From positions 1 through 64,000 of IMG/VR virus record IMGVR_UViG_3300009181_000033: 64,000 nucleotides of DNA. One strand, given 5' to 3'. This document shows positions 12,998-63,244 of this stretch, one piece after another. How positions within the stretch are numbered: position 1 is the stretch's first letter; each line of letters starts with the position of its first letter. A model generated the notes under the pieces. That model was not told where the DNA came from and did no database searches. It saw only the letters and a list, made by a program, of their open reading frames with translations. The translations under genes were made by a program, and so were the position numbers.

Positions 12998-13305
12998 TTT
13001 TTTTATGTCTAGCGATGTCTTCTTTGCTTTTAACGCTGCTCATAGTCAGCGTTAAAAAAAACTTCCAATTGATTAATCAATTGGAAGATGTTTCAAATCA
13101 AGTCGAAGAATCGCTAGACATTTTGGATTCTTACTACCAAAAAATAGACCTAAAGTCAAAAACTGAAATTTGGTCTGATGAACCAATTGTCAAGGACTTA
13201 ATTGAAGACATTAAGGGATGTAAAAATGCCGTCTTATTGGTTGCCAATAAGGTATATTCTCCCCTGGAACAGAATGATGAAAATGATGAAGGAAGCAAAA
13301 ATTGA
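12994..13305 (+). CDS. Membrane-anchored coiled-coil hypothetical protein
   Basis: N-terminal hydrophobic helix IFLCLAMSSLLLTLLIV followed by an acidic heptad-like segment. Confidence 0.6.
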   Translation: MIFLCLAMSSLLLTLLIVSVKKNFQLINQLEDVSNQVEESLDILDSYYQKIDLKSKTEIWSDEPIVKDLIEDIKGCKNAVLLVANKVYSPLEQNDENDEGSKN

Positions 13306-14117
13306 AACAGAGAAGAAGCACCAAAAAAGGAGCAAGCGACATTGCTGAAGTCGAATTAGAAATAGAGAATGCCAGCATTCTCGTTGACCTATCGATAATA
13401 GAAAAAATCAGTCCCTTAGGCGAAAAATCACCAAAGCCAAACCCCAAATTATATTTTAATTCGGACACACAAGACGCAATAGTCTCTTTTCAAACTGAAA
13501 AAAATAAAAAAATTAGAGACTCAATCTACGTCAATGACATACTCCCTGCATTCGAAAAATTGGTTGAAAATTTAATCAATATACACAAGTTCACTGGCAT
13601 TTTTGACTCTTATGAAGACTTAAAGAATGACTGCGTTAATTTTTTGTTTGAAACGATACACAAATTTGATGCCGCCCGAGGAACTAACGCATTTTCTTAC
13701 TTCAATGTCGTTGCCAAAAATTGGTTGATTATAAAAACCAAACAAAAGACCCAAAAGATAAAAAGAAACATTAGCGTCGATGATCCAAGCGGATTGACAG
13801 CTTATGAATCAATGGTTATTGATGAACACAATTCCGTCCCTTCACAGGACGTGGTTTTTGAACAGAGTTTTTTCACAGAAGAAACACTGAATTTGCTTCA
13901 TGAAATAAGGTCAAGAACACGCTCAGAGAACGAATTGATGTGCATAAATTCCATAATCACTATATTTGAAAATATAGAAGAAATCGATTTATTGAATAAA
14001 GGTGCCGTTTTGCTGTACATGAGGGAGTTATCAGGTTTGACGCCCAAGCAGTTAACAACAACGATGCAGTCAATAAAAAAACACTATAAAAAAATAAGGG
14101 TTGATTTAAAGAAGTGA
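13302..14117 (+). CDS. Phage sigma factor, T4 gp55-like (late transcription)
   Basis: Sigma region-2-like EDLKNDCVNFLFETIHKFDAARGTNAFSYFNVVAKN; lies directly upstream of the baseplate module. Confidence 0.7.
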   Translation: MKQRRSTKKGASDIAEVELEIENASILVDLSIIEKISPLGEKSPKPNPKLYFNSDTQDAIVSFQTEKNKKIRDSIYVNDILPAFEKLVENLINIHKFTGIFDSYEDLKNDCVNFLFETIHKFDAARGTNAFSYFNVVAKNWLIIKTKQKTQKIKRNISVDDPSGLTAYESMVIDEHNSVPSQDVVFEQSFFTEETLNLLHEIRSRTRSENELMCINSIITIFENIEEIDLLNKGAVLLYMRELSGLTPKQLTTTMQSIKKHYKKIRVDLKK

Positions 14118-14132
14118 ATCGATATTTTTAAC

Positions 14133-14498
14133 ATGACGACGCACAAAAAAACAGAAATCATTATTGAGCAAAAAATAAAAGATTTTTCAGACCTGCTGAG
14201 CCAAATAAGTGATGTTTCCGATAAAAAGAAAAAACTTTGGAAGGAAATATATGAAAATGCTGTAGCAGATAGGCAAAATGCTTATGTGCTCTTCACAACA
14301 CTTGTCGACATAGTGGAAGACAAAAGCACCGAGCATGCAATACACGGAAAGACCATCTCTACTTACATAGAGAGAATGAGTAAGGCGAATGATCAGCTAA
14401 TAAGACTAGCGGAGCTTATAGCAAAATCAGAAACCAAAGAAGAAAACATAGACGCAGAGGAAATGTTTAAGAAAATAGGCGAAAAGTGTAATGGCTGA
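14133..14498 (+). CDS. Helical hypothetical protein
   Basis: 121 aa, coiled-coil-like; coupled to the baseplate hub gene. Confidence 0.65.
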   Translation: MTTHKKTEIIIEQKIKDFSDLLSQISDVSDKKKKLWKEIYENAVADRQNAYVLFTTLVDIVEDKSTEHAIHGKTISTYIERMSKANDQLIRLAELIAKSETKEENIDAEEMFKKIGEKCNG

Positions 14499-15996
14499 TG
14501 TATTTGATCCAGTTTCTTTTGCGGAAGGCAACTCAGGCAAGAAAAATACTCTTGCAGCGACTATACCTACCACAAATAGCCAATTTTCTAAAATGATAGT
14601 TTTGGACGTGGTGTCTGATCCTGGAGTGGCAACCGATGAAAAGGTCGAATATTGGAAAAGTGTTCTAGGCGTCACCAACATTAAGTACGCAAAAGTTTTA
14701 CCAAGAAATACAATAATAGCCATATCGATAGGAAGAGGTCACGAACCAATGTTCGTTTTTCCATTTTTTCCATCACATCTCGCAATGCCCTCCAAGCCAG
14801 GCGAAACGGTTTGGGTTCTTTTAGAAGACCCTAATTCTCCCCTAACAGGAATGGTCTACTGGGTGTCAAAAGTTAATATGCCACACTATGTTGACGATGT
14901 CAATATTCAACACAACCCAAGAATTTCTGAAATTTCATTTTTTCCTGGATTGATAGAAACGGCAAAAGAAGAAATAAAGACATACTATGAACTAAGGAAT
15001 GGCCCAATAAGAACTGACGAGAATGACATAAGAGGAACTTCAGTCGACGACTGTTATCTTGTCTTGAAAAGCAGGCCCAAAGAAGACATATTCGAAGATT
15101 TATTAATGAAATCAGACTCTGGAAAAATGTCAAATTGGGAATCCGTTCCTAGGTTTAAAAAGAGACCTGGAGATGTTGCAATAGAAGGTTCGAATAATTC
15201 ATTAATAGTGCTCGGAACTGATAGAGCTGGACCCATTTCAGGGTACGAACAATTTACAGTCGGTGAAGGCAATGAAAAAAATGATTACGGGCCAGTGCCA
15301 ATACCTTCTGCTTCCGATTTAGCAGGGTTTGCTGGATCTATAGATTTAGTGGCGGGAAGAGGCCAAACACAAGCAACAGGTGGGAAAACGGTTGATACAA
15401 CGAGCATCATCGATGCCGGCCCAAATAAATCAGGCACTTCATTTAAAAAAGAAATTGGCAAATCAGAAAATGAACTCGAGTCTCAAGAGGGAGATCCGGA
15501 TTTAAAAAACGACAGCAGTAGAGTTAGAATCTCCCAGAGAACTATGACAGATACAAATTTTAACCTGTCATCATTCAATTCAAAAGAATTTACAATAAGT
15601 GACACATCGACAGGTGATGCCGCTGTTGTAATAAAAACAGACAAGATGAGAATTGTGGCAAGGTCAGATGTAGAAATTTTAGTTACCAATTTTTCACCAA
15701 TGAACGATGCACGAGATCCGACAAAGCCACCAACAAAAAATGAAAAAGATACGACGGATGATTGGGCAGCCATAGTAATAAGAGCCAATGGCGACATAAT
15801 TTTTAGGCCATCAAAATTAGGGTACATTAAATTAGGCAGCGACAAAGCAAATAAAGCCATCATGTGTGCCGACCTGCCAGCCGAGCAAAATCAAGGCACC
15901 ATTACTTCTTCCCCTATATTTTCAACAGGGAATGATTTGGTTTGCACTAGCCAAAGTGGCCAAGGGACATTTGCAAAAAAAGTTTTAGTTGATTAG
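14491..15996 (+). CDS. Baseplate hub/central spike-like protein (gp5/VgrG-like)
   Basis: N-terminal OB-fold-like PFFPSHLAMPSKPGETVWV..YWV; RPGDVAIEG-x3-SLIVLGTDR; beta-helix-like C-terminus; gene order. Confidence 0.6.
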   Translation: MADVFDPVSFAEGNSGKKNTLAATIPTTNSQFSKMIVLDVVSDPGVATDEKVEYWKSVLGVTNIKYAKVLPRNTIIAISIGRGHEPMFVFPFFPSHLAMPSKPGETVWVLLEDPNSPLTGMVYWVSKVNMPHYVDDVNIQHNPRISEISFFPGLIETAKEEIKTYYELRNGPIRTDENDIRGTSVDDCYLVLKSRPKEDIFEDLLMKSDSGKMSNWESVPRFKKRPGDVAIEGSNNSLIVLGTDRAGPISGYEQFTVGEGNEKNDYGPVPIPSASDLAGFAGSIDLVAGRGQTQATGGKTVDTTSIIDAGPNKSGTSFKKEIGKSENELESQEGDPDLKNDSSRVRISQRTMTDTNFNLSSFNSKEFTISDTSTGDAAVVIKTDKMRIVARSDVEILVTNFSPMNDARDPTKPPTKNEKDTTDDWAAIVIRANGDIIFRPSKLGYIKLGSDKANKAIMCADLPAEQNQGTITSSPIFSTGNDLVCTSQSGQGTFAKKVLVD

Positions 15997-16004
15997 GAGA
16001 AATT

Positions 16005-17848: not shown

Positions 17849-17855
17849 ATAATTA
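17849..17855 (+). promoter_or_regulatory. Putative late promoter motif ATAATTA
   Basis: 4 nt upstream of ATG 17860; the same motif sits at a similar spacing before 7 other genes. Confidence 0.55.
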
Positions 17856-17859: not shown

Positions 17860-18327
17860 ATGGCTTCCTACAGTTTTAAGAGCGCAGGAAAAACTCAAGA
17901 ACAATCTGTGATTGAGCAAATAACGAAAACGCAATTTCCATTCGGGATAAAAACTCCGGTGACAATTGGCGACAATGGTTCCATCTTTGCCATGAACTAT
18001 AAGCTGGAAAATCAACTTGCCGATAATCTTAAAAATCTATTGTTGACAAACCATGGTGAAAGATTGGGCTTTTATTATTTTGGTGCGAACCTGAAGCCAA
18101 TAACCACTGAGCTGTCGTCCCAAGAAAACTTTGACAATGAAGCAATTGCAAGAATAAAGAAGGCAGTTGATGTTTGGATGCCATATATTGATTTGGAAGA
18201 TTTCTCTTCCTCAGTCGATAGGAATGAAAATAAAAATACGGCAATCATAAAGATAACGATTTCTTATAACATACCTTCTATTCAAGTGAAAAATAAAAGA
18301 CTACAGGTAGTCTTGTATGCAATTTAA
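17860..18327 (+). CDS. Baseplate wedge protein, gp25/GPW-like
   Basis: NLKNLLLTNHGERLG-x3-FGANL, I-x2-AV-x-WMPYIDL, IKITISYNI. Confidence 0.88.
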   Translation: MASYSFKSAGKTQEQSVIEQITKTQFPFGIKTPVTIGDNGSIFAMNYKLENQLADNLKNLLLTNHGERLGFYYFGANLKPITTELSSQENFDNEAIARIKKAVDVWMPYIDLEDFSSSVDRNENKNTAIIKITISYNIPSIQVKNKRLQVVLYAI

Positions 18328-20212: not shown

Positions 20213-21704
20213 AAAAATATCGGCAGACAAAGACACCTACATAACCAATAAATTTGTCAATTCAAAGCAAGCGATATCTTCAAATTTAGGCGCGGCCGGA
20301 ACTTTAGATCTCTACAAAATACATGGTGCGAATATTGTCAATGGCATGCCTCAAAACGAGGTGTCAAGAATCTTGATGCACTTTGACCTAGAAGGGCTAA
20401 AAAAAGATGTAAAAGAAAATAATTTAGACATTAATGATAAAAGTTTCTTTTGCAAACTTTATCTCAGAGATGTTTATGGCGGACAACCAACGCCTTCTAA
20501 TTTTACTATTGATGTTTTCCCCCTGTCTGCTTCGTTTGATGAAGGATTCGGCAAAGACGTCGTAAAATATTCAGATAGAGGATTGTCAAATTGGTTGACT
20601 GCTTCTTACGAAAAGCCCTGGGCTCTAACAGGTTCATCAAAGGGCGGTGGATCAACTGAAATTTGCGATTTTATCACTGGTTCTACCGTCTTGGCTACCA
20701 CAACTTCTTCTTGCTATTTCAAGACTGGCACAGAGGATCTAATTGTTGACGTTACAAAAATAGTGTCATCGACCATCTCAGGTGAGTTGCCCGACAGTGG
20801 ATTTAGATTATCATTTACGTCTGCTGCTGAGGAGGATAAAAAAACTTACTTTGTGAAGAGATTCGCAAGTCGACACGCATACGATGAAACAAAGCACCCG
20901 AAGCTAGCATATGGATATGATGACTCTGTTTTTGATGATACACTAAATCTATCCCTTGATAAATCTTGTAGCATAAGTCTATATAACTTTTCTCAAGGTG
21001 AAATGGCAAACATTATTTCATCTAGCACACAAATAACAGGGGAAAATTGTGTCTTGTTGAAACTCTCGACCAACAATCCATCCGGATCCTCCGGGGATTA
21101 TGCCCTATACTTTACAGGTTCGCAGAGTTCCCGTGGAGATGCATACTTGTCCGGAAGCTATTATGCAGAATTCATTGTCAACAATGACGAAACCATCCGA
21201 AAAAAATTCATAGAGTCAAGCTCTGTAAAATTTGAGGCTTCCTGGTTGTCGCTTGATTCAAAGTTGACGTATTCAAGCGGAGACCTGATTTTCTTCAACT
21301 CAAATTCATCCCAAATGTCACACAATGACAAAAAATACATTGTCAGCGTCCTTGGCCTGCAGGATTCTTATTCTGACAAAGAAGTGGCCACCTTGAGGGT
21401 AAACATATTCGATTCAACAAATCCTCTCGTGAAAATTGCAAAAATGCCAATAGAGTCACCAAATGTTGTTTTGAGAAATTCACATTACAGCATTAGAGAT
21501 GCAATTACAAATGAAATTGTTGTCCCTAAGGATGAAATAAATAACTCAACAAAATTAAGTAGTGACAATAAAGGAATGTTTTTTAAACTTTATTTATCTG
21601 CCCTTCCCATAGGAAGAACATACGTTGTAGACGTGCACACAGAGGCTTATGGAGTAAAAAAAGTCCACCAAAATGCATCTCAAATATTTAAGGTTGTAAA
21701 ATAA
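20205..21704 (+). CDS. Baseplate/tail structural protein
   Basis: 499 aa, coupled to the gp6-like gene; beta-rich, TGS/SGS-rich. Confidence 0.65.
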   Translation: MYKKISADKDTYITNKFVNSKQAISSNLGAAGTLDLYKIHGANIVNGMPQNEVSRILMHFDLEGLKKDVKENNLDINDKSFFCKLYLRDVYGGQPTPSNFTIDVFPLSASFDEGFGKDVVKYSDRGLSNWLTASYEKPWALTGSSKGGGSTEICDFITGSTVLATTTSSCYFKTGTEDLIVDVTKIVSSTISGELPDSGFRLSFTSAAEEDKKTYFVKRFASRHAYDETKHPKLAYGYDDSVFDDTLNLSLDKSCSISLYNFSQGEMANIISSSTQITGENCVLLKLSTNNPSGSSGDYALYFTGSQSSRGDAYLSGSYYAEFIVNNDETIRKKFIESSSVKFEASWLSLDSKLTYSSGDLIFFNSNSSQMSHNDKKYIVSVLGLQDSYSDKEVATLRVNIFDSTNPLVKIAKMPIESPNVVLRNSHYSIRDAITNEIVVPKDEINNSTKLSSDNKGMFFKLYLSALPIGRTYVVDVHTEAYGVKKVHQNASQIFKVVK

Positions 21705-21722: not shown

Positions 21723-24700
21723 ATGGCAAGCAATTTTGGACAGGGCTATTCATCGCTATACATCAAGGAGGAACTGGAACAAAGCCTGCCGGTTCAATTA
21801 AATTACAAGGAAACCATCGTCGAAGGCGAGACAAACATAGTCGATGAAAACTCATTCAGGTATGATCCGCTCAATTATCCACTAAAAAGCACACAACAGC
21901 TGAATGTCGACTGGTCCAAATTTGAAAACCACACTTTCTTTTCCTCTGCAGAAGTTAAGGTCAATGAAGCTTTTAACACGATAATAAATGGATTTCCTTT
22001 TGATGGAACAAAAAAGGAAATGGAGGCATTTTGCGATAAACTGACCGGATTTGAAAAATATGTGTACGACAATTTTCCAACTTGGTCGGGTGCATTGCAC
22101 TTCAAAAGTAGCCAAAAAAATTATATCTCGGTGGAAGACAAGTCTGGTTTTTTGTATCCTGAAATTTCTAGAAATTCCTCGGGCACAACGATCATAAATC
22201 CAAGCGATATTGAAAAATCATTCACAATAGAAGCACAAATCTTTCTTCCAACCGTGACAAATGGTCCGCAGGTGATCATGCAGAAGAATGCGTCTTCCAC
22301 CGAAGGCTTTACCTTGTTTTTAGAAAGTTCAATTTCCACAACAACAGTCAATGCTACGTTTTGTGTCTCTTCAGGATCAGTCAGAAACAAAGTAACAACA
22401 GCCTTAGACAAAGGAAAATTTAATCACATTTGTGTTACTCTAAATAAACAAGATCAAGCGGAAGACTTTTTGCAATTTTATGTCGACGAAGACTTGAAGG
22501 CAATGAGCGATTCCAATATTAGTTTTTATAAACTAAACATCGATAACCAACCGCTCCTGATCGGTTCAGGCTCTGCGTTTTATAGCGAAAATACACTCGT
22601 AACACCCACTGCGACACTAAGTGGAACAATTGACGAATTAAGAATTTTTCATTCCACAAGGACCCCACAACAACAAACACTGTACGCGACAAGGGGAATT
22701 TATCAATCTCCCGATCTTAAATTATACTATAGATTCAATGAGCCACCGCCACCACTGTCCTTGTATTCTGATAGTGATGCAATCAATTCAATGATTTTGG
22801 ACAGCTCAGGCAATTCCCTGCACGCATCCATTGTTAATTTCACCGGCAGCCTTAGAATCAATGCAGAGACAGACGAGCTGAACCCCATAAAAAATGAAAG
22901 GCTGGATTTTAAAAAGGTTCTTTTTCCTGCTTCACTTGATGTTAGAGAATACAATGAAAAGCTGCTCGAAGAAGCAAAACTGTATGATCTAAATAATCCA
23001 AATGGAATAATAAAACTAATTCCACCACACTATCTTCTCGAAGGTGCTGCCGAAGAGGGGTTTAGCGACATAGAAGGAAATGCAGGAAACGCATATGGTG
23101 GCTCTGGCATGCCTGGTCAAGGTGAAAAGGGATCAACGCAAGTCATACTTTCATTCCTCTACATATGGTCAAAATTCTTTGACGAGATTAAGCTGTTTTT
23201 GGACGCATTCGGAACGATAAAAAACATAAATTACGAAACCGACATGTATGATACCGTGCCGGATAATTTTTTGCAAGACATGATAAAAAACAGTGGATTT
23301 TATCTTCCTACGTTTTTTAACCATTCTTCGATAAAACAATACGTCGACGGGGAAGATATTGATGCAAATAACGCAATCTTGGATGTTTCCCTAAAAAAAC
23401 TGCAAGCGAATATCATGAGGAGAGTTCTGATGGCCCTGCCCGACATCTCCAGGTCAAAAGGTACACTACACAGCATAAAATCATTCCTCAGGTCCGTCGG
23501 CATAGATCCCGATAACAGTCTAAAAATAAGGGAGTATGGTGGATCAACCACAAAAACACTAACAAATTCAAGGGAATCTCGTAACGAATTTGGTGCGCTC
23601 ATAAACTTTACAACCTCGTCGTTGGTGACCACGCCCTTCCTGACAGGATCCAGAATAGAACCCGGTTATCCAGAGCCCGCGGGTGCGTTTGTATACTCAA
23701 ACGACCAGAGAGTCGGCACGACAAATTCAAGCGATGGACTTTTGACGTCAGGCTCTTGGACAACGTCAGCGGTGTTTAAAGTACCTAAAAATGCAAATGC
23801 TGGAAGCATATCATTGTTGAGGATGTTTTCGACAGGATCTAATTCCTATTCAAAACCAGGCCTTATTTTTAACCTCATAGCAACACAAAAAGAAGACAAG
23901 GTGCCTTCAAAGATAAAGCTCTATGGAAGACCATCCCACCAAAACACCGCTCCCACGCTGAGCATGTACCTAAACCTGCCGGATGATGGAATATTTGATG
24001 GAAATAAATGGAACATATCTTTTGGTAGAAAAAGATCTGACGAAATTACTGGAGCATTACACACTTCTTCTTCTTATTACCTGAGAGCATCCAAAACCGG
24101 AGAAGGTGAGGATTCAATTTATTATTTGACTTCTTCGTTTTTTGGATACAACCAGTACGACATACTTCAACTTAAGTCTAGCAATTACAATGCATCAGGC
24201 ACATTTTTTGCCATGGGGAATCAAAAAGATTCTTCATTGCCGACATTTTCATTGTTCGGTCACCTAAATGGCACAAGTATAGACCCAGAAGCAAGAACTT
24301 TAAATTTCAATGGTCTTATTTCTAATTTCCGATTTTGGTCAAAATCAATGGACGAAAATGAATGGAAGGAACAGGTAAAAAATTATAAGTCGCTAGGAAC
24401 TAATGATCCATATGCAAATTATAACTATACAAAAACCCCTTCAGGTTCATTCAACCAAATAAGAATCGACTCCTTAGCAAAACAACCAGAGGCATATTCC
24501 GCCACAGACGGAAAAATTACCTTCCTCGATTTCAGTCAGAGAAACATGCACCTGACGGGCTCAGGATTTGGTTCAAAATCCAAGGTTTTGGTGGGGGATA
24601 GCTTTAGTTATTCCACATTGTCGCCTTCTTTCGATGAAGCCTCAACAAACGAAAAAATAAGGATTAGGAGTTACAGTGATCCAAGGCTATTGGACGAGAA

Positions 24701-25184
24701 CCCATGGGCGGTCGCGACGCCGTCTTACCTCAAAAACGGACTGTTCGCCACTGAAGAGCCACAGGACGACACAAGACTGTCAATAGAGTTTTCCTTGGTC
24801 GATGCACTCGATAGAGACATTGTCAATATGTTTTCAACGCTTGAGATATTGGGAGATGCCATCGGAGCACCAGAGTTAGCATTTTCTGTTGACTATCCGG
24901 ATTTAGAAAAACTGAGGGATGTCTATTTCAATAGATTGTCTGAAAAAATGAACTTTAAAAAATTCTTGGAGTTTTATCGATGGTTTGACATGTCAATATC
25001 GACGTTCGTCCACCAGCTAATACCAAGCAGGACGAAGTTCTATGGCACAAATTATGTCATAGAATCACACATGCTGGAGAGACACAAGTACCAGTATAAG
25101 TACGAAGAAAATTATCTAGGTGACGCAAAAACTCAGTACGATAATCAGGTGACAAACTACATAAACAGCATGAGAAAGATTTGA
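21723..25184 (+). CDS. Large baseplate/tail protein with LamG (concanavalin-like) domains
   Basis: SFTIEAQI..FNHICVT..LLIGSG..LSGTIDELRIF..LKLYYRFNE LamG signature; second LamG-like segment (FNGLISNFRFW). Confidence 0.75.
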   Translation: MASNFGQGYSSLYIKEELEQSLPVQLNYKETIVEGETNIVDENSFRYDPLNYPLKSTQQLNVDWSKFENHTFFSSAEVKVNEAFNTIINGFPFDGTKKEMEAFCDKLTGFEKYVYDNFPTWSGALHFKSSQKNYISVEDKSGFLYPEISRNSSGTTIINPSDIEKSFTIEAQIFLPTVTNGPQVIMQKNASSTEGFTLFLESSISTTTVNATFCVSSGSVRNKVTTALDKGKFNHICVTLNKQDQAEDFLQFYVDEDLKAMSDSNISFYKLNIDNQPLLIGSGSAFYSENTLVTPTATLSGTIDELRIFHSTRTPQQQTLYATRGIYQSPDLKLYYRFNEPPPPLSLYSDSDAINSMILDSSGNSLHASIVNFTGSLRINAETDELNPIKNERLDFKKVLFPASLDVREYNEKLLEEAKLYDLNNPNGIIKLIPPHYLLEGAAEEGFSDIEGNAGNAYGGSGMPGQGEKGSTQVILSFLYIWSKFFDEIKLFLDAFGTIKNINYETDMYDTVPDNFLQDMIKNSGFYLPTFFNHSSIKQYVDGEDIDANNAILDVSLKKLQANIMRRVLMALPDISRSKGTLHSIKSFLRSVGIDPDNSLKIREYGGSTTKTLTNSRESRNEFGALINFTTSSLVTTPFLTGSRIEPGYPEPAGAFVYSNDQRVGTTNSSDGLLTSGSWTTSAVFKVPKNANAGSISLLRMFSTGSNSYSKPGLIFNLIATQKEDKVPSKIKLYGRPSHQNTAPTLSMYLNLPDDGIFDGNKWNISFGRKRSDEITGALHTSSSYYLRASKTGEGEDSIYYLTSSFFGYNQYDILQLKSSNYNASGTFFAMGNQKDSSLPTFSLFGHLNGTSIDPEARTLNFNGLISNFRFWSKSMDENEWKEQVKNYKSLGTNDPYANYNYTKTPSGSFNQIRIDSLAKQPEAYSATDGKITFLDFSQRNMHLTGSGFGSKSKVLVGDSFSYSTLSPSFDEASTNEKIRIRSYSDPRLLDENPWAVATPSYLKNGLFATEEPQDDTRLSIEFSLVDALDRDIVNMFSTLEILGDAIGAPELAFSVDYPDLEKLRDVYFNRLSEKMNFKKFLEFYRWFDMSISTFVHQLIPSRTKFYGTNYVIESHMLERHKYQYKYEENYLGDAKTQYDNQVTNYINSMRKI

Positions 25185-32185: not shown

Positions 32186-32216
32186 TGGTTACCCCTGGAT
32201 GCAATTGGAGAATTTG

Positions 32217-32298
32217 TCCTATCCGTGGGAGTTGCACCCACACGCCTTTTGGGCACCGCATTTTGAGTGCGGCATGTCTGCTGTTCCATCAGGATAGG
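32217..32298 (-). tRNA. tRNA-Leu(CAA)
   Basis: Acceptor CCTATCC/GGATAGG; anticodon arm CCGCA-CTCAAAA-TGCGG; long variable arm; T-arm GTGGG-TGCAACT-CCCAC; no encoded CCA. Confidence 0.9.
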
Positions 32299-33226: not shown

Positions 33227-33230
33227 TTAG

Positions 33231-33255: not shown

Positions 33256-33332
33256 AAATAAATATCTAAACTTAGATCTCTTTCCAAAGATGGAGCAACG
33301 GGCAAACATTAAATGCTTGCCAATCGATTATT

Positions 33333-33735: not shown

Positions 33736-33742
33736 ATACTTA
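33736..33742 (+). promoter_or_regulatory. Putative late promoter motif ATACTTA
   Basis: 8 nt upstream of the fibre ATG at 33751. Confidence 0.45.
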
Positions 33743-38650: not shown

Positions 38651-38656
38651 ATTCCT

Positions 38657-38686
38657 ATATTACCTCGCAAAAAGTTGACTTTGCAC
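38657..38686 (-). promoter_or_regulatory. Early/middle promoter candidate GTGCAA-N18-TAATAT
   Basis: Ends 6 nt upstream of the ligase start codon. Confidence 0.6.
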
Positions 38687-40596: not shown

Positions 40597-40638
40597 AAAG
40601 TGTTCGGTAATTATACGGAACACTTTCAAAATGGACAA
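40597..40638 (-). promoter_or_regulatory. Sigma70-like promoter whose -10 box sits inside an inverted repeat
   Basis: Minus strand TTGTCC-N17-TATAAT; AAAGTGTTC/GAACACTTT arms (40597-40626) flank the -10. Confidence 0.55.
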
Positions 40639-41406: not shown

Positions 41407-41671
41407 TTACCTTTCGCAATTTTCCCATTGCCATGGGAGAAAATCTAGATTGCTGCAAAACAGCCAGCCTTTTAGCTAAATCAAAATCAGTATCATATTC
41501 ATTTTTAAGGACAATATCCTTATTTTGTTTTTCGTTCCTCTTCGACAAGAGGAATTTGCATTCCTTTATGTCATTAGACAAACTTCGGACTAAAAATAAT
41601 GTGCTGAGTGAAATAATAGCTGAGGAAAAGAACAGCATTAATTCAAGTACAAAATTTATTCCAATGCGCAT
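41393..41671 (-). CDS. Small membrane protein
   Basis: Hydrophobic N-terminal helix [22 protein letters not shown]. Confidence 0.6.
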
Positions 41672-42468
41672 CCTGCCTCTAATGCAACTAATTCTTCTGG
41701 TGAAATAAAATAATCTGAACGATTATCTGGTTCGTCAAACAAACCGAACCGCAATCTTAAAATTGCCGCCTCCTTTTCCGAGAGTGTCATCAATACACTT
41801 TTGACAATTCCCATCAATTCCTTTGAAGAAACGTTAAAGAACGGATCGTTACTTTCCTCTGTGTCCTCAAGTCTTTCCTCAAGAGTTGCAGCATCAGGAT
41901 CATTGGACACAGATTGATTCAAAGAGACAATATTCTTCCCAGAAGAAAGAGTTGCCTTCACAACAGTTTCAGACGCATCTACGATATCTGCCAAATCCCC
42001 ATCAGAAGGATCACACCCCATTTGCTCACGAAATTCTTCGGTTGCTTGCAGCAATTTCTTTTGAAGCGTTGCAGCATGGGCAGGCAATCTAATCATGCGT
42101 TTTCGCTTCAGCACATGTTGACTAATGGCTTGTTTGATCCACCAAGTTGCATAAGTTGAAAAACGAAAACCTTTTTTGTGATCGAATCTTTCGATTGCCT
42201 TTAGTAGGCCTAAATTACCTTCCTGAATGAGGTCCTCAAGAGGAATATTATGGCCTTTGTGCTTTTTTGCAATGGAGATTACAAGGCGAAGATTACTTTC
42301 GATAAGCTTTTTTCTAGCCTTTTCACCTACAGTACCACCTGTTGCATATTGCTGAAAAAGATCGATGACCTCCGGGTGTTTAAGCTGTGTAAATGATTTC
42401 ATGTCATTCAAATAGGAATGAATGATATCACTGTTTGAAAACGAGCCAATCTTAAAAGTTTCTGCCAT
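41656..42468 (-). CDS. RpoD/SigA-like group 1/2 sigma factor lacking region 4.2
   Basis: Region 1.2 IHSYLNDM; region 2 [28 protein letters not shown]-x2[17 protein letters not shown]; region 3 IRLP; region 4.1 [15 protein letters not shown], then ends with no TRERIRQIE helix. Confidence 0.92.
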
Positions 42469-43575: not shown

Positions 43576-43586
43576 GTGCTATTCTT

Positions 43587-43616
43587 GTTATATCACCGTC
43601 TTGCAAAATCTTGCAC
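43587..43616 (-). promoter_or_regulatory. Early/middle promoter candidate GTGCAA-N18-TATAAC
   Basis: Ends 11 nt upstream of the deaminase ATG; TG extended -10 present. Confidence 0.6.
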
Positions 43617-43769: not shown

Positions 43770-43776
43770 ATATTTA
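43770..43776 (+). promoter_or_regulatory. Putative late promoter motif ATATTTA
   Basis: 5 nt upstream of the endolysin ATG at 43782. Confidence 0.55.
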
Positions 43777-44578: not shown

Positions 44579-44585
44579 ATAATTA
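44579..44585 (+). promoter_or_regulatory. Putative late promoter motif ATAATTA
   Basis: 5 nt upstream of GTG 44591. Confidence 0.5.
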
Positions 44586-46641: not shown

Positions 46642-46814
46642 ATGTTTATTTTGGTATAATAAATCAACACTCGCAAATGGAAAATATTTCCTACCATTTT
46701 ATTGCTAGGGAAACATCATAAACTCCATCATGTTCTACATTGCATGTTTCGCAATCCACACAGATGAATATTAATTCAGATTCGAACTAGCGACTAGGTG
46801 TTTCAATTAATTTG

Positions 46815-46886
46815 CTGGTAGGCGTGGAGTCGAACCACGATCGTACAGATTAACAGTCTGTTGACTTGCCATTAGTCGACCTACCA
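46815..46886 (-). tRNA. tRNA-Asn(GTT)
   Basis: Acceptor TGGTAGG/CCTACCA; D-arm GACT/AGTC; anticodon ACAGA-CTGTTAA-TCTGT; T-arm CGTGG-TTCGACT-CCACG. Confidence 0.93.
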
Positions 46887-52081: not shown

Positions 52082-52284
52082 GTTTTTAATTATTAATGTT
52101 GCCACGTTTTTATTTTTCTATATCGAATTAAATTAAAAAACGGTGTTATATCTAAATGCTAACTCTTGGAAGAAAAATAGGTTCAAATTTTTGCATGTTG
52201 TTAATTAACATTGTGGGCCCATTGCTCCCGGGAAACATAACATCAACATCATTCAGGTCATAAAAGTAGACTAGAAGTGGCAAC

Positions 52285-52980: not shown

Positions 52981-53162
52981 ACCACTCACCATCATCTTCT
53001 CTTTGAACACACTTTTTGTGTATTTCTAGAAATGCTAGAAAAATATTTTTATTCATGGTTGAATATATTCAATAATGAATATTTATTGACGTTGAGACGT
53101 GTCGTGCACTAACGCACTTCATGCTTGACAACCTCAAAGTAATTACAAAGGAAGGTTTTTAT

Positions 53163-55457
53163 ATGGCTCAAACACATATACAACAGCATCAGATTAGCGG
53201 CTCGCTTTCAATGGACATCTCAGATAATGTCGAGCGCAATAATTTGGTTAAAGCAGGTCGCACAATTATTGACGACCTCAATTCACTTCGCTCACAGGTG
53301 AAAGGAATTCTCGGTTCAGCCGCATGGACCGACGAACAATCCATCTCCCTGCAGAACCTTAAGGCTCAGTTGACGGGAACCTTGGTTGCCAACTCAGCTT
53401 CTTTTGCCAGTGCCGTTTATGTGAGCGGTGCAGGTTCATTGGTGGTTGATGGCGCAGCTACATTTAACGAGGCAGCTGACTTCAACAATGGCATTACCGC
53501 TGATGTACTAAAGATCGATGGAGACGTCTCACAAAGACTCTACATCGTTGGTACCTCTGGTGAACTCAAAGACGAGTCAAAGCTCGTCTTCAATGGCTCA
53601 GCACTCACCGTGGACGGAGACCTCAACATCTCCGGAAGCTCAGTGTTTGCCAACCCAGCCGACTTTAACAATGGAATCACCACTGATGAACTAAAGGTTG
53701 ACGGCGACGTCTCACAACGTCTCTACATCGTTGGTGCCTCTGGTGAGCTCAAGGACGAAGAGAAGCTCGTCTTCAACGGTTCAGAACTCACAGTTGACGG
53801 CGGACTTAATGTCTCCGGAAGCATTGTGATGGGTGGGACTATCACGCTCAACGAAGCAGCCGACTTCAACAAAGGAATCACCGCTGATGAACTAAAAATC
53901 GACGGTGACACAGCCCAACGTCTCTACATCGTTGGTGCTTCTGGTGAGCTCAGGGACGAAGAGAAACTAACGTTTGATGGTTCAGAGTTAAATGTAACAG
54001 GGGATCTAGAGATCAGCGGAGCTGCTGACCTCAATGGTGCCTTGGATGTTGCTGGTCAAGTTGACCTCGCTGCCTCAGAGGTTGCCACCAACGTTCGTGG
54101 TACACTTTCAGTGGCGGAAGCCGCTGACCTCAATGGCACCCTAGACGTCGCTGGTCAAGTTGACCTCGCTGCCTCAGAGGTTGCCACCACAATCCGTGGC
54201 ACACTAAATGTTGCTGAGGAAACAACCCTCGCTTCTGCCAAGGTTTCTGACCTCACTCAGACTTATATTGTCTTCGCTGGTCTCGATGGCGCTCTTGAAG
54301 ACAGTGAGGCTCTCTCCTTCGCCTCAAACCAACTAACAGTTGGTGCTTCTGGCGCAGCTGGTTCTGTCACCATCAAGAATGCCTCTGGTGATCCAATCTT
54401 GCAAGCTGGCTCCGGTGAGCTAGTGATGCGTGACAACAATGGCGATGCAGTCTTGTACGTCAACTCGGTATCCAAGACCTTTGATCTGAAGAATGTTGAT
54501 GGAGACTCTACATTCCATGTTGCAGCAGCGTCAGGTAATACAGAGGTTGCCGGTACATTAGATTCAGCTGGTGACTTTGCGGTCGCCTCTGACAAATTCA
54601 CTGTCGCAGCAGCATCAGGTAACACCGCAGTTGCTGGTACATTAGATGTCACCGGGAACGCAATCTTTGCAGGAAACGTTCAGGTCGACGGAGATCTTCG
54701 CGTCAAGGGTTCGATGACCTACATCGACACCGTCAACATTCGCGTCGAGGATGCATTCATCTATCTCGCCACCGGCTCACTTGGATCCACCGATTCAGGT
54801 GTTGTCCTTCACGGTGGTGCTGGTGCTGATATGGACCTTGCCATCGCCCAAAAGGGCGGCTCTGGTGAGTTCATATTCGGCAAGGGCAATCGTGCCCCTG
54901 ACGGAGAAGGTGCTCTTGACGGAATGGTTCTCGTTCCTGCCAAGCTCAGTGAGGTAAAGTTCGGCTCAGCCGAAAATGCCCTCAGCGGCTCAATGTCAAT
55001 CGCCGGAAACGATATCAAGCTCGCCGCCTCGGCCGCTGCAATCGTATTCGACGATGCTTACCGTGCTTCTTCAACATACGCTGCTCCCATTAAGCTCGCC
55101 GCCTCGGCGTCCGAGTGGTCAGCGTTCCAGACACAGTATCCCGGCAAATCACTTCTCGGTGCCCTTGGTGCCGGCGGTGGTGTCGGTGTCAACTTCCGCA
55201 AGAAGATAATCATGGGGAACAATGCTAACTTCAGCGGCAATACACTTGACATCGCTGCAGCCGGCGTCGGTTCTCTTCGCAGCACCGCTCAGGCAGACTC
55301 CGACTATGGTCTCGATGTCTACCTCAACGGTGTCCTCTTGGCTCTCGGCGCTAGCGCCGACTACACAGTGCCAAGCGTATCACAAATCAGCTTCAACTAT
55401 GCTTTGAACAGCGATGACGTTCTCACAATCGTCGCCAAGAACATCGCATCTGCCTGA
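53163..55457 (+). CDS. Long beta-repeat fibre protein
   Basis: Start re-called at MAQTHI with SD AAGGAAGG; internal 61/67/55-aa and 33-aa repeats; VEDAFIYL..G trimer-fibre motif; C-terminal DVYLNGVLL..DYTV module. Confidence 0.8.
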   Translation: MAQTHIQQHQISGSLSMDISDNVERNNLVKAGRTIIDDLNSLRSQVKGILGSAAWTDEQSISLQNLKAQLTGTLVANSASFASAVYVSGAGSLVVDGAATFNEAADFNNGITADVLKIDGDVSQRLYIVGTSGELKDESKLVFNGSALTVDGDLNISGSSVFANPADFNNGITTDELKVDGDVSQRLYIVGASGELKDEEKLVFNGSELTVDGGLNVSGSIVMGGTITLNEAADFNKGITADELKIDGDTAQRLYIVGASGELRDEEKLTFDGSELNVTGDLEISGAADLNGALDVAGQVDLAASEVATNVRGTLSVAEAADLNGTLDVAGQVDLAASEVATTIRGTLNVAEETTLASAKVSDLTQTYIVFAGLDGALEDSEALSFASNQLTVGASGAAGSVTIKNASGDPILQAGSGELVMRDNNGDAVLYVNSVSKTFDLKNVDGDSTFHVAAASGNTEVAGTLDSAGDFAVASDKFTVAAASGNTAVAGTLDVTGNAIFAGNVQVDGDLRVKGSMTYIDTVNIRVEDAFIYLATGSLGSTDSGVVLHGGAGADMDLAIAQKGGSGEFIFGKGNRAPDGEGALDGMVLVPAKLSEVKFGSAENALSGSMSIAGNDIKLAASAAAIVFDDAYRASSTYAAPIKLAASASEWSAFQTQYPGKSLLGALGAGGGVGVNFRKKIIMGNNANFSGNTLDIAAAGVGSLRSTAQADSDYGLDVYLNGVLLALGASADYTVPSVSQISFNYALNSDDVLTIVAKNIASA
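53475..54218 (+). repeat. Internal tandem repeats of the fibre gene
   Basis: Three ADFN-x-GIT..QRLYIVG-x-SGEL units starting at 53475, 53658 and 53859; two near-identical 99-bp units starting at 54021 and 54120. Confidence 0.9.
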
Positions 55458-55477: not shown

Positions 55478-55509
55478 GAATGCGGGCGGGAAATTTCCCG
55501 CCCGCATTC
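55478..55509. terminator. Perfect 32-bp GC-rich palindrome, probable terminator of the fibre gene
   Basis: GAATGCGGGCGGGAAA/TTTCCCGCCCGCATTC, 21 nt after the stop. Confidence 0.75.
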
Positions 55510-55533
55510 TCTATTTGGAATATAATTAATAAC

Positions 55534-57687: not shown

Positions 57688-57741
57688 AAACTTTAATTAT
57701 TCCTCACTTCTCATTTTTCAAGTTTATCACGGAGTTTCGTG

Positions 57742-60121: not shown

Positions 60122-60136
60122 GGTTCTACCTTACCA

Positions 60137-60418
60137 TCATCCTGCGGAACTTTGCACAACTTCCAGATATTCGGCTGGAATCCAGCCGGTATTTCCGTTG
60201 TTCACCATGATCTTATGGGAACGAGGAATTCCATTCATATCGAAGTGATCCTCAAGAACCACACCGGTGTTTTCACGGGTGAATCCTGAGTTATTTGCCC
60301 GAAACTCGCACTTGGGGTCCACGTACAGGTACGAGTGTTTCACGTACTTATCCTTGAAGAGAACTACGGAATCACCAATCTTCTTGATTGAAGTTGAGAG
60401 GGTGAACTTATTCCTCAT
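60137..60418 (-). CDS. SH3-like small protein
   Basis: KIGDSVV..TGVVLE..KIMVNNGNTGWIPAEYLEVV. Confidence 0.7.
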   Translation of the reverse strand: MRNKFTLSTSIKKIGDSVVLFKDKYVKHSYLYVDPKCEFRANNSGFTRENTGVVLEDHFDMNGIPRSHKIMVNNGNTGWIPAEYLEVVQSSAG

Positions 60419-62419: not shown

Positions 62420-62431
62420 AACCCTATCCTA

Positions 62432-62701
62432 TCATGGTTCCTCAGGGTTTTGCACCGTTCCTAGAACAATATAGGTTCCATCGGTTACGTAAGAATAGTT
62501 CTCACACCTTCTCATGGGAACTTCGTGTTTAAAAACCGTTCCAGGCCGGGAAGAATGAATCAATAGGATCTTTGAAACACCATCACCAGGAATTCCAGGA
62601 AGTTCACCAACGATTGTATAAATTGTGTTTCTGGATTGGGATAGGATAACATCACCAACCTGTAATTCACTCTCCAGGGCAACGGAACCGATCTCCCTCA
62701 C
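62432..62701 (-). CDS. Small protein, paralog of 60451..60693
   Basis: Shares LQ-x-GDVIL, IYTI-x-GELPGIP and HEVP motifs. Confidence 0.7.
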   Translation of the reverse strand: MREIGSVALESELQVGDVILSQSRNTIYTIVGELPGIPGDGVSKILLIHSSRPGTVFKHEVPMRRCENYSYVTDGTYIVLGTVQNPEEP

Positions 62702-62703
62702 CG

Positions 62704-62886
62704 TTACCCCACAAGGTGTTTATCGTGGCGGAATTCTGTTAGGATCTCCCACAGGAGGGCCGGAAGTGAATCATGGATGTGAAGGTAACCTGGTATACCA
62801 TCATACATGCAACACCAGGCCGGGCCAGGTGAAATAACTCCGGGCTTTTCTCTCCAAATCCTGAATGATTTCATTAGGTTAAACAT
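62704..62886 (-). CDS. Small protein, paralog of 60693..60830
   Basis: KPG-x-IS-x-G-x2-WCC..GYL-x-I..LW..DKHLVG*. Confidence 0.7.
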   Translation of the reverse strand: MFNLMKSFRIWREKPGVISPGPAWCCMYDGIPGYLHIHDSLPALLWEILTEFRHDKHLVG

Positions 62887-63099
62887 TCAACTACGAATTT
62901 CTAGTTCAGCTTCGAGTTCGGTGATTTGCCTTTTTAATTCAGCAATTTGTAATCTAATCTGAGCGGTGGAAAGATTACTAAAATCTTTTGGTTTAGGTAA
63001 ACCAATCATTCTACTTTTTTCTTTCTTATCTTCGGTTAGTTGGGCTCGCTTAATTTCTTCTGTAATAATCTGCTTAAGTTGTGCTGCGGTGATTTTCAT
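62887..63099 (-). CDS. Putative internal head protein (QLRxII leader family)
   Basis: MKITAAQLKQIITEEIKRAQLTE; ATATTTA 5 nt upstream (63105-63111). Confidence 0.65.
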   Translation of the reverse strand: MKITAAQLKQIITEEIKRAQLTEDKKEKSRMIGLPKPKDFSNLSTAQIRLQIAELKRQITELEAELEIRS

Positions 63100-63244
63100 G
63101 GTGATAAATATATCTCCTAATTAAAAATGTCAGTGAAGTTGAAAATATCATATACTGATGATTAGCAACGCGAGGTGTATCATAGGGATATTTATTTATT
63201 GTGAGTTAGAGAAAAGATACGGCCTTGTGCCGTATCATGAATCG

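What the first reader, a model, noticed from the sequence alone, without database searches (positions are those of the whole stretch)
13302..63111. ATA(A/T/C)TTA motif 4-8 nt before start codons: candidate late promoter driving leaderless mRNAs
Seen: the 7-mer precedes eight starts at nearly fixed spacing: 17849 (gp25-like, 4 nt), 33736 (fibre, 8), 43770 (endolysin, 5), 44579 (5), 52087-52093 minus (5), 55522 (5), 57694-57700 minus (6) and 63105-63111 minus (5). There is no SD in between, and most identifiable targets are structural, lysis or putative head genes. Known: T4 gp55 recognises a -10-only TATAAATA. Inference: the gp55-like sigma at 13302 reads this element and transcription starts at or next to the start codon, giving a leaderless late programme.
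Basis: partly seen in the sequence, partly recalled or inferred. Interest (0 to 1): 0.65.

Follow-up and report, generated by a model that had tools for sequence, protein, structure and literature searches.

The report
Late promoter abutting start codons
An uncultured 298-kb freshwater phage places a short promoter box, ATAnTTA, about five bases before many start codons, so many late messages probably start at the start codon itself; a second, ordinary promoter class does the same for its early genes.

Summary
All eight sites exist. The raw count is not enriched, but the position is: genome-wide, 26 of 129 copies end 4-8 nt before a gene's ATG (mode 5 nt; about 5 expected, p=2e-11). The true motif is ATAnTTA, with position 4 free and no -35 element. 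It is enriched in intergenic DNA (63 vs 24), depleted in coding DNA, and 29 times denser in divergent than in convergent gaps. Its core, TAnTTA, is conserved before the orthologous gp25-like gene in related phages while the flanks and the spacing (4-17 nt) vary. About half the sites lie 10-80 nt upstream and then have an SD. It heads sheath, fibre, baseplate and lysis genes, plus homing endonucleases and a few metabolic genes. I read it as a T4-late-type, -10-only promoter. Aligned to T4's -12..-6, the 5-nt spacing puts +1 on the A of the ATG. The 13302 protein is a sigma-fold protein whose only PDB sequence hit is T4 gp55. Two corrections: a second class (TTGACA-like -35 plus TGnTAnAAT, then 6 nt, then ATG) makes early genes leaderless too, and the phage also encodes an RpoD-like sigma lacking region 4.2, a rival reader. 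No 5'-end data exist, so the start sites and the sigma assignment are inferred.

The parts
13302..14117 (+). gp55-like sigma, the candidate reader of ATAnTTA. Residues about 50-155 form a sigma region-2 fold. Residues about 166-271 form an extra helical domain of unclear kinship.
17849..17855 (+). Class A box ATAATTA, 4 nt before the ATG of the gp25-like baseplate gene (17860-18327).
   Evidence: The orthologous upstream regions in relatives keep the TAnTTA core in 33 of 37 cases.
21684..21690 (+). Class A box ATATTTA, 32 nt before the ATG of a 1153-aa gene (21723-25184). This is a leadered site.
33259..33265 (-). Class A box ATATTTA, 32 nt before the ATG at 33226 (151-aa gene). It is the minus side of a divergent gap.
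33736..33742 (+). Class A box ATACTTA, 8 nt before the ATG of the YadA-type fibre gene (33751-36876).
40608..40614 (-). Class A box ATAATTA, 69 nt before the ATG at 40538. The leader contains an AAGGAG SD.
43770..43776 (+). Class A box ATATTTA, 5 nt before the ATG of the endolysin gene (43782-44564).
   Evidence: The box and the 5-nt spacing are conserved in L150.
44579..44585 (+). Class A box ATAATTA, 5 nt before the GTG of a 264-aa gene (44591-45385).
   Evidence: The L150 orthologue has ATATTTA, 5 nt, then ATG, with a different spacer.
52087..52093 (-). Class A box ATAATTA, 5 nt before the ATG at 52081 (96-aa gene).
53079..53085 (+). Class A box ATATTTA, 35 nt before the ATG of a 778-aa structural protein gene (53121-55457). 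This is a leadered site.
   Evidence: RNA contigs from a lake metatranscriptome lie inside this gene.
55482..55505 (+). GC-rich terminator-like hairpin between the stop of the 53121-55457 gene and the next class A box.
   Evidence: Read directly.
55522..55528 (+). Class A box ATAATTA, 5 nt before the ATG at 55534 (197-aa gene).
57694..57700 (-). Class A box ATAATTA, 6 nt before the ATG at 57687 (99-aa gene).
63105..63111 (-). Class A box ATATTTA, 5 nt before the ATG at 63099 (70-aa gene).
63657..63663 (+). Class A box ATACTTA, 5 nt before a GTG at 63669 (387-aa ORF).
41656..42468 (-). Second phage sigma, RpoD/SigA-like, with regions 2 and 3 but no detectable region 4.2. It is the rival reader of -10-only boxes.
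   Evidence: Sigma70_r2 E=1e-24. r2 plus r3 only. It aligns to RpoD_Cterm positions 1-194 of 238.
38651..38686 (-). Class G promoter: GTGCAA, spacer, TAATAT, 6 nt, then the ATG of the DNA ligase gene (37310-38650).
   Evidence: It is conserved in 40 distinct orthologous upstream regions with the ATG at a fixed offset.
43576..43616 (-). Class G-like promoter (PWM score 19.7) at the head of the minus-strand run that includes the RpoD-like sigma gene.
60122..60157 (-). Class G promoter, 36 nt from GTGCAA to the ATG of a 70-aa gene. Further class G hits lie at 60454 and 62455.

Best explanation
ATAnTTA is the -10-type core of a phage-specific promoter class that has no -35 element. It has the same architecture as the T4 late promoter TATAAATA, which spans -13 to -6. 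Aligned to T4 positions -12 to -6, it matches at five of its six specified bases; it differs at -8 (T instead of A), and -9 is free.

I propose that host core RNA polymerase carrying the phage's gp55-like sigma (13302-14117) opens DNA at this box and starts about 6 nt after it. About half of the sites have the start codon 3-8 nt after the box (mode 5). At these sites the transcript begins at or within a few bases of the AUG and is translated as a leaderless mRNA. At the other half the box lies 10-80 nt upstream and the leader carries a normal Shine-Dalgarno sequence.

The class mainly drives virion and lysis genes, plus homing endonucleases and a few others, so it is a late programme. A separate class with a TTGACA-like -35, an extended -10 TGnTAnAAT, and an ATG exactly 6 nt downstream drives the early and DNA-metabolism genes. 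That class is most simply read by the host's primary sigma.

Shown: the motif, its positional, orientation and intergenic statistics, its conservation in relatives, the functional split, and the sigma fold. Inferred: the start sites, the timing, and which sigma reads which box.
For: Position: 26 of 129 copies end 4-8 nt before an ATG, against about 5 expected (p=2e-11).

Specificity: every single substitution outside position 4 abolishes the enrichment, except ATAnATA, the pattern that includes the T4 core. An unbiased k-mer search of upstream regions ranks the four ATAnTTA words among the top five 7-mers.

Promoter-like distribution: intergenic DNA has 63 copies against 24.4 +/- 5.0 from shuffles, and coding DNA has 85 against 120 +/- 14. 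Divergent gaps hold 19 copies in 3.0 kb and convergent gaps hold 1 in 4.5 kb (p=3e-7). Back-to-back boxes face divergent genes. One box follows a terminator hairpin.

Architecture: no other column is conserved from -45 to +25.

Two classes: 33 sites lie at 9 nt or less and have no usable SD (2 of 33 have a misplaced one), while most of the 36 leadered sites have a well-placed SD.

Conservation: the TAnTTA core is present before 33 of 37 distinct gp25-like orthologue upstream regions, against 2.7% per window by chance. The flanks do not align and the spacing runs from 4 to 17 nt. L150 keeps both 5-nt sites, and the sheath orthologues keep nTAnTTA.

Geometry: the T4 box spans -13 to -6 and has no -35 (PMC2988020).

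Independent support for leaderless expression: in class G the ATG lies exactly 6 nt after the hexamer in 30 of 43 hits, and it stays at that fixed offset across 40 diverged orthologous upstream regions.

Function: class A heads two sheath genes, a fibre, a wedge-like protein, the gp25-like protein, the YadA fibre, structural proteins and the endolysin. Class G heads a ligase, an exonuclease, a DnaB-like ATPase and the resolvase-DnaE run (Fisher p=0.019).

Sigma. In the alignment, the gp55 residues for the A(-12) pocket and for the clamp-helix contacts are kept (Y97=Y133, F86=F122, L54=L91, N13=N53, E70=D106, D74=D110). The residues for the -9 and -8 pockets differ (H95 to F131, T99 to N135), and those are the two positions where the promoters differ (PMC7892883).
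Against: No transcript 5' ends are available. The only RNA run holds contigs inside one gene.

The kinship to gp55 is weak at the sequence level. A profile of 18 homologues does not recover gp55 from the PDB, and by structure gp55 is tied with other sigma-2 domains. The protein has an extra C-terminal domain of about 100 residues that gp55 lacks.

No gp33-like or gp45-like partner was found, and the replicase is DnaE-type rather than T4-like.

A second phage sigma without region 4.2 is an alternative reader.

Several class A targets are not late-type genes, and two class A sites sit inside the early-like small-gene cluster.

The spacing before the gp25-like orthologue varies, so the leaderless state is not conserved gene by gene.

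A distant contig with ATATTTA before its sheath gene has no detectable gp55-like gene, though it is only 84% complete.

The gene calls are my own simple ORF model.
Confidence: 0.6

Rival explanations
1. ATAnTTA is a promoter, but it is read by the phage's RpoD-like sigma (41656-42468), which lacks region 4.2 and so cannot use a -35 element. The gp55-like protein would then do something else or read a class not yet recognised.
For: The RpoD-like protein aligns only to positions 1-194 of 238 of the RpoD C-terminal model and has no Pfam region 4. A sigma without region 4.2 fits a promoter without a -35 element. Its gene sits behind a class G-like promoter, so it could be made early and switch on a later class.
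Against: Its region 2 is typical of primary sigmas (Sigma70_r2 E=1e-24). That predicts a TAnnnT -10 like class G's, not ATAnTTA, which requires A at its first and last positions. It was found in only one of five large related contigs, whereas the gp55-like gene was found in three; all are incomplete. The differences from T4's box fall at the positions whose gp55 pocket residues differ in the 13302 protein.
Confidence: 0.15
2. ATAnTTA is read by a host sigma, either the primary one at a weak -10-only site or an alternative one, without any phage sigma.
For: Four of the 33 close sites also read as TATAAT or TATATT when the preceding T is included. In Deinococcus-Thermus, a -10 motif alone next to an ORF suffices as a promoter for leaderless genes (PMC12340547).
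Against: The base before the box shows no preference for T. The box requires A where a sigma-70-type -10 requires its most conserved T at -7. Classes A and G are distinct in sequence, location and gene function. The box-to-ATG spacing mode differs by one base from class G's hexamer-to-ATG spacing.
Confidence: 0.08
3. The motif acts on RNA, as a translation enhancer or operator at the initiation region, or as an endonuclease processing site that trims leaders. On this reading it is not a promoter.
For: It lies immediately 5' of many start codons, is AU-rich, and there is no SD at those sites.
Against: Half of the sites lie 10-80 nt upstream of the start, beyond a normal SD. Divergent gaps, where no upstream transcript exists to be processed, are 29 times richer in the motif than convergent gaps. 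One site directly follows a terminator. In orthologues the motif is kept while its distance to the ATG varies from 4 to 17 nt. The motif is depleted inside genes on both strands.
Confidence: 0.04

Closest known systems
T4 late promoters (TATAAATA) read by gp55 with gp33 and gp45
   Same: Both are a single AT-rich box at the -10 position with no -35 element (PMC2988020). Five of the six specified bases match when the box is aligned at -12..-6. Both precede virion, lysis and homing-endonuclease genes on either strand. The phage encodes a sigma-region-2 protein whose best sequence matches are gp55.
   Different: The consensus is ATAnTTA: -9 is free, -8 is T, and nothing is required at -13. About half the boxes abut the start codon, whereas T4 late mRNAs have leaders (my knowledge of T4). 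The sigma carries an extra C-terminal domain. No gp33 or gp45 was found, and the replicase is DnaE-type.
Leaderless genes with a -10 box next to the ORF (Deinococcus-Thermus, Actinomycetota; Thermus phages phiYS40 and P23-45)
   Same: A -10-type element lies a few bases before the start codon, without an SD, as reported across Deinococcus-Thermus (PMC12340547). From my own knowledge, phiYS40 middle and late transcripts are largely leaderless (Sevostyanova et al. 2007, listed in the references of PMC12340547; I could not read it). P23-45 middle and late promoters are of the extended -10 class (PMC7403470).
   Different: In those systems the host primary sigma reads an ordinary -10. Here one of the two leaderless classes has a non-sigma-70 box and a candidate phage sigma. 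The host is unknown and the phage is a 298-kb freshwater genome.
Transcription programmes of other jumbo phages (phiKZ, AR9)
   Same: These are large phage genomes with temporally separated promoter classes.
   Different: Those phages use their own multisubunit RNA polymerases and show no leaderless transcripts. phiKZ had none detected (PMC8244752). AR9 UTRs are 26-491 nt (PMC5312081). This phage has no detectable T7-like RNAP gene (a search whose control also found nothing) and instead encodes two sigmas. Multisubunit phage RNAP genes were not searched for.

Membership tests
T4-type late promoter | A single 7-8 bp AT-rich box at the -10 position with no conserved -35 element | tested here: met
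   Across 69 aligned sites, no column other than the six box positions exceeds 0.5 bit from -45 to +25. The T4 architecture is taken from PMC2988020.
T4-type late promoter | Consensus TATAAATA | tested here: not met
   The consensus is ATAnTTA. The T4-like variant ATAnATA keeps only weak enrichment (9 of 126), and exact TATAAATA shows none in relatives.
T4-type late promoter | Precedes late (virion, lysis) genes | tested here: met
   10 of 17 annotated class A-headed genes are structural or lytic, against 0 of 7 for class G. The exceptions are HNH endonucleases, a transposase, PNK, NMNAT and an RNR fragment.
T4-type late promoter | Box about one helical turn upstream of a mapped primary 5' end; dependence on gp55 | not testable with these tools
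   Only RNA contigs inside one gene were available.
gp55 (T4 late sigma) | Sigma region-2 homology domain | tested here: met
gp55 (T4 late sigma) | Sequence membership in the gp55 family | tested here: inconclusive
   phrog_234 hits at E=2e-6 and 7e-8, and T4 gp55 is the sole PDB sequence hit at E=0.046. There is no Pfam or NCBIfam hit, and an 18-sequence profile does not recover gp55.
gp55 (T4 late sigma) | No sigma-4 domain; a helix-loop-helix after region 2; a C-terminal sliding-clamp-binding motif | tested here: inconclusive
   The protein has an extra helical domain of about 100 residues (166-271). Within the whole-protein alignments it lines up with sigma-4 of ECF sigmas, but on its own it matches nothing significantly.
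gp55 (T4 late sigma) | Partners gp33 (co-activator) and gp45 (sliding clamp) | tested here: not met
   The neighbouring small proteins have no PHROG hit. There is no gp45 N-domain and no DnaN hit in the genome (the PF02916 control found nothing anywhere, so that search is weak). Diverged partners cannot be excluded.
Leaderless genes with a promoter abutting the ORF | A -10 element ends 5-8 nt before the start codon, there is no SD, and the start is mostly AUG | tested here: met
   Class A: mode 5 nt, 27 of 33 starts are ATG, 2 of 33 have a misplaced SD-like word. Class G: 30 of 43 have the ATG exactly 6 nt after the hexamer, at a fixed offset in 40 orthologous upstream regions.
Leaderless genes with a promoter abutting the ORF | Primary 5' end mapped on the start codon | not testable with these tools
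   No read-level RNA data were available.
Housekeeping sigma-70 / sigma-A promoter (class G) | A TTGACA-like -35, a 17-18 nt spacer, and a TAnAAT -10 with TGn extension | tested here: met
   The PWM gives 43 hits against 3 in a shuffled genome. Orthologues vary among GTGCAA, TTGCAA, ATGACA and GTGACA, with TGnTAnAnT.

The most novel reading that the evidence does not exclude
A widespread clade of uncultured aquatic large phages runs an almost wholly leaderless gene-expression programme from two promoter classes. Its late class would be read by a diverged, two-domain gp55-like sigma that works without gp33 or a gp45-type clamp. Changes in that sigma's base-flipping pockets (H95 to F, T99 to N in T4 numbering) would have re-tuned promoter positions -9 and -8, giving a natural specificity switch in the gp55 family.
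Probability: 0.3. Interest if true: 0.75.

Novelty: new variant of a known kind. Interest (0 to 1): 0.6.

Why it matters
If correct, this gives a simple, testable promoter code for a large and common group of uncultured freshwater and marine phages. It would allow their genes to be sorted into early and late sets, and their start codons to be called, from sequence alone. It would also extend gp55-type late transcription beyond T4-like phages, to a lineage with a different replicase and no recognisable gp33 or gp45. That raises the question of how late transcription is coupled to replication there. It offers a natural pair (T4 gp55 with TATAAATA, this sigma with ATAnTTA) for studying how a minimal sigma reads DNA. 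Finally, it implies that the unknown host translates leaderless mRNAs efficiently, which narrows the host search.

Tried and rejected
1. Direct RNA evidence. One lake metatranscriptome holds the phage, but only as three contigs inside the 53121-55457 gene, so it carries no 5'-end information.
2. Near-identical phages in the reference phage collection: none found.
3. A profile of the sigma against PDB sequences gave only a spurious dipeptidase hit.
4. The fold of the sigma's C-terminal domain alone gave no significant match. Sigma-4 appears only at rank 31 with E about 5.
5. Searches for gp45 (PF02916), DnaN (PF00712), T7-like RNAP (PF00940) and WhiB (PF02467) in the genome all came back empty. 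For PF02916 and PF00940 the controls were also empty, so those two blanks are weak.
6. Host identification through the RpoD-like sigma. The best cellular relatives (34-45% identity) are spread over Lentisphaerae, Acidimicrobiales, Saccharibacteria, Chloroflexota, Clostridia and others, so no call can be made.
7. Co-occurrence of box and sigma in distant contigs. G001 has ATATTTA before its sheath gene but no detectable gp55-like gene at 84% completeness, so the test is inconclusive.
8. Cultured relative Flavobacterium phage immuto. It shares the sigma-baseplate synteny and has ATATTTAtaataa before structural genes. However, ATATTTA is also part of its Bacteroidetes-type early -7 box, so it does not discriminate.
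9. A third, -10-only sigma-70-type class for the truncated RpoD-like sigma. TAnnnT-N6-ATG shows some excess beyond the class G hits, but there is no TGn enrichment and no clean motif, so this is unresolved.
10. Chance or AT-richness as the explanation: rejected by the permutation, substitution, shuffle and orientation controls.

Full report
WHAT THE WINDOW IS

The window is the first 64 kb of a single 297,894-bp contig with 42.9% G+C. IMG/VR classes it as a complete virus record with direct terminal repeats; the ends overlap by 123 nt. It has no near relative among reference phages. It recurs in freshwater metagenomes from 17 studies. I called about 350 genes with a simple codon-model ORF picker, and all gene-based counts below depend on those calls.

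CHECK OF THE OBSERVATION

All eight sites are present with the stated spacings. The overall number of ATAHTTA words in the window is ordinary: 31 against 32.5 in shuffles. Their position is not ordinary. Genome-wide, 26 of 129 copies end 4-8 nt before the ATG of a called gene, 11 of them at exactly 5 nt, against a background of about one per offset (p=2e-11).

Scanning every single substitution shows that the real motif is A-T-A-n-T-T-A. Position 4 takes any base. Every other change abolishes the enrichment, except ATAnATA (9 of 126), the pattern that includes the core of T4's TATAAATA. An unbiased k-mer search of upstream regions places ATACTTA, ATATTTA, ATAATTA and ATAGTTA among the top five 7-mers.

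WHY IT IS A PROMOTER

- The motif is enriched in intergenic DNA (63 copies against 24.4 +/- 5.0 in dinucleotide shuffles) and depleted in coding DNA (85 against 120 +/- 14).
- Nearly all intergenic copies point towards the next gene.
- Gaps between divergent genes, which must hold promoters, carry 19 copies in 3.0 kb. Gaps between convergent genes carry 1 copy in 4.5 kb, a 29-fold difference (p=3e-7).
- Several divergent gaps hold two back-to-back copies, one for each gene.
- The 55522 copy lies just after a terminator hairpin.
- No other column is conserved from 45 nt upstream to 25 nt downstream, so there is no -35 element.
- The sites fall into two groups. 33 have the start codon at most 9 nt after the box (mode 5 nt, 15 sites); 27 of these starts are ATG and none has a usable SD. 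36 have the box 10-80 nt upstream, and most carry a well-placed AAGGA, GGAGG or GGAG in the leader. A signal that acted on the ribosome would not sit beyond the SD.

COMPARATIVE EVIDENCE

55 IMG/VR loci encode a homologue of the 13302 protein at 46-73% identity. Before their gp25-like gene, whose N-terminus is conserved from the first residues, 21 of 37 distinct upstream regions carry an exact ATAnTTA and 33 of 37 carry the core TAnTTA. The chance rate is 2.7% per window, and the rate at other ORF starts in the same loci is 10%. The flanks do not align, position 4 varies among all four bases, and the distance to the ATG runs from 4 to 17 nt, with an SD-like GAGGG appearing at the longer distances. 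The box is therefore conserved in its own right and not as part of the initiation region.

A 72%-identical relative (L150) keeps both 5-nt sites, at the endolysin gene and its neighbour, with a different fourth base, a different spacer and ATG in place of GTG. Sheath orthologues keep nTAnTTA ahead of an SD-containing leader.

A SECOND PROMOTER CLASS, AND WHY IT MATTERS

The same k-mer search turned up GGTGCAAAGTC. This word belongs to a two-part element: GTGCAA, about 18 nt, TAnAAT, 6 nt, ATG. GTGCAA lies exactly 36 nt from the ATG at 19 genes. A weight matrix finds 43 sites against 3 in a shuffled genome, and in 30 of them the ATG begins exactly 6 nt after the hexamer. That places its A at +1 by standard sigma-70 geometry.

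Before the DNA ligase gene, 40 distinct orthologous upstream regions keep an nTGCAA or nTGACA box, a non-conserved spacer, TGnTAnAnT, and the ATG at the same offset. This is an ordinary housekeeping-type promoter fixed to the start codon. It is strong indirect evidence that this phage clade, and so its hosts, use leaderless mRNAs.

The two classes are segregated. Class G fills the small-gene region at 57-110 kb, and class A is spread over the large-gene regions.

GENE FUNCTIONS

Class A heads two tail-sheath paralogues, a collagen-like tail fibre, a baseplate-wedge-like protein, the gp25-like protein, the YadA-type fibre, two structural proteins and the endolysin. It also heads two HNH endonucleases, a transposase, a polynucleotide kinase, an NMN adenylyltransferase and a ribonucleotide reductase fragment. 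Class G heads a DNA ligase, an exonuclease, a DnaB/RecA-like ATPase, an AAA ATPase, an HNH endonuclease, and a resolvase-like gene followed by the DnaE-type polymerase. Structural or lytic genes make up 10 of 17 annotated class A heads and 0 of 7 class G heads (p=0.019). 'Late' is therefore a fair label for class A, with exceptions.

WHO READS THE BOX

It differs from gp55 in having a further helical domain of about 100 residues. That domain lines up with sigma-4 of ECF sigmas in whole-protein alignments, but on its own it matches nothing significantly.

The T4 late box spans -13 to -6 and has no -35 (PMC2988020). Placing ATAnTTA at -12..-6 matches T4 at -12, -11, -10, -7 and -6. It also puts +1 on the A of the ATG at the modal 5-nt spacing.

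In the gp55 open complex, A(-12) stacks on Y97, A(-9) contacts N13 and H95, and A(-8) bonds T99 (PMC7892883). In the alignment, Y97, F86, L54 and N13 and the clamp-helix contacts E70 and D74 are matched by Y133, F122, L91, N53, D106 and D110. Apart from N53, these residues are invariant across the clade. H95 and T99 are replaced by the invariant F131 and N135. The pockets that differ are the ones for -9 and -8, which are exactly the positions where the two promoters differ. This rests on a weak alignment and is an inference.

A COMPLICATION

The phage encodes a second sigma at 41656-42468 on the minus strand. It is RpoD/SigA-like, with regions 2 and 3, but it aligns only to positions 1-194 of 238 of the RpoD C-terminal model, so it appears to lack region 4.2. 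A sigma without region 4.2 could also serve a promoter without a -35 element. I rank this rival lower for three reasons. A primary-type region 2 predicts TAnnnT rather than ATAnTTA. Class G already supplies such -10 boxes. And the pocket differences fit the gp55-like protein. I found no clean third promoter class for this sigma.

No gp33-like or gp45-like partner, DnaN, T7-like RNAP or WhiB was detected, and the replicase is DnaE-type. If late transcription is coupled to replication here, it is not by the T4 route.

LIMITS

No transcript 5' ends could be examined. The one metatranscriptome holding the phage gives only contigs inside the 53121-55457 gene. The host is unknown. The RpoD-like sigma's cellular relatives are spread over many phyla. 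The frequent strong SDs argue against a Bacteroidota host, and the leaderless genes suggest a lineage that translates such mRNAs well, but that is conjecture. A distant contig shows ATATTTA before its sheath gene without a detectable gp55-like gene at 84% completeness. Flavobacterium phage immuto, a cultured phage with a homologous sigma and the same sigma-baseplate synteny, has ATATTTAtaataa before structural genes, but it also has ATATTTA inside its early -7 box.

COMPARISON WITH WHAT IS KNOWN, AND VERDICT

The architecture and gene set are those of T4 late promoters, but the consensus test for TATAAATA fails and the partner proteins are missing. A -10 box abutting the ORF to produce leaderless mRNA is known in Deinococcus-Thermus (PMC12340547). 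From my own knowledge it also occurs in Thermus phages and actinobacteria. The well-studied jumbo phages phiKZ and AR9 show no leaderless transcripts. My searches of the paper library found no report of a gp55-type class in leaderless configuration.

I rate this a new variant of a known kind. My confidence is about 0.85 that ATAnTTA is a promoter core, 0.75 that the close-spaced sites give leaderless or near-leaderless mRNAs, 0.7 that the class is late, and 0.6 that the 13302 protein reads it.

Noticed in passing
window 38651-38686, 43576-43616, 60122-60157, 60454, 62455; genome 57-110 kb: A second promoter class: GTGCAA(AGTC), about 18 nt, TGnTAnAAT, 6 nt, then ATG. There are 43 PWM hits, mostly before small early-region genes and DNA-metabolism genes, in leaderless geometry. 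Even the 6 nt between the hexamer and the ATG tend to read aGAAyC.
   Followed up: yes
window 41656-42468 (-): An RpoD/SigA-like sigma with regions 2 and 3 but apparently no region 4.2. Its function and target promoters are unknown. A 59%-identical copy is present in one related contig (G005).
   Followed up: partly
G000 67.4-74.5 kb (L003): A family of small paralogous early genes whose products begin MKPGDMV... (for example at about 67.6, 68.5, 69.2, 70.3 and 74.4 kb). Each has its own class G promoter.
   Followed up: no
G000 84.3 kb (-) and 113.5 kb (+) (L004/L005): Two genes of about 1050 aa, one of them baseplate-wedge-like, face outwards on either side of the early region. They share a 155-nt, 93%-identical promoter-plus-5' segment in inverted orientation, including the same class A box and SD.
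   Followed up: partly
G000 257774-260902 (L012:13774-16902, -): The portal protein ORF (1042 aa) contains an HNH endonuclease domain at residues about 176-290 ahead of the portal domain. This may be an intein or a homing-endonuclease fusion.
   Followed up: no
G000 204192-206030 (L010:192-2030, -): A ribonucleotide reductase large-subunit fragment (288 aa) lies next to an HNH endonuclease gene, and each has its own class A box. The RNR gene looks split by a homing element.
   Followed up: no
G000 292120-292351 (L014): The divergent gap before a 662-aa plus-strand gene is filled with tandem imperfect repeats of AATTAGATACAATTAGAAG-type units. These could be iterons, an origin, or a regulator array. 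This gap may head the long plus-strand run that wraps around the contig end into the window and includes the gp55-like gene.
   Followed up: no
G000 234939-241078 (L011): Two adjacent tail-sheath paralogues of about 1000 aa each, both with their own leadered class A promoter. A related contig (L151) also has both.
   Followed up: partly
window 33226-33265: The leader between the class A box at 33265 and the ATG at 33226 contains a GGGGTTCGATTCCCC T-arm-like hairpin, although ARAGORN calls no tRNA there. tRNA-Leu (32216-32298) and tRNA-Asn (46814-46886) are nearby, and tRNA-like 3' ends are also visible near 91 kb and 97 kb.
   Followed up: no
window 10542-12997: Two adjacent glycosyltransferase genes lie just upstream of the gp55-like gene. 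The first is preceded by GGTAATAT, then 5 nt, then ATG, which is a -10-like box with no recognisable -35.
   Followed up: no
L222 (Flavobacterium phage immuto, 60-78 kb): About 20 small genes are each preceded by a nearly identical TTG...TATATTTAGGTATCAATAATTAAAAC element 8-10 nt before the ATG. This is a very regular Bacteroidetes-type early promoter with a short A-rich leader.
   Followed up: partly
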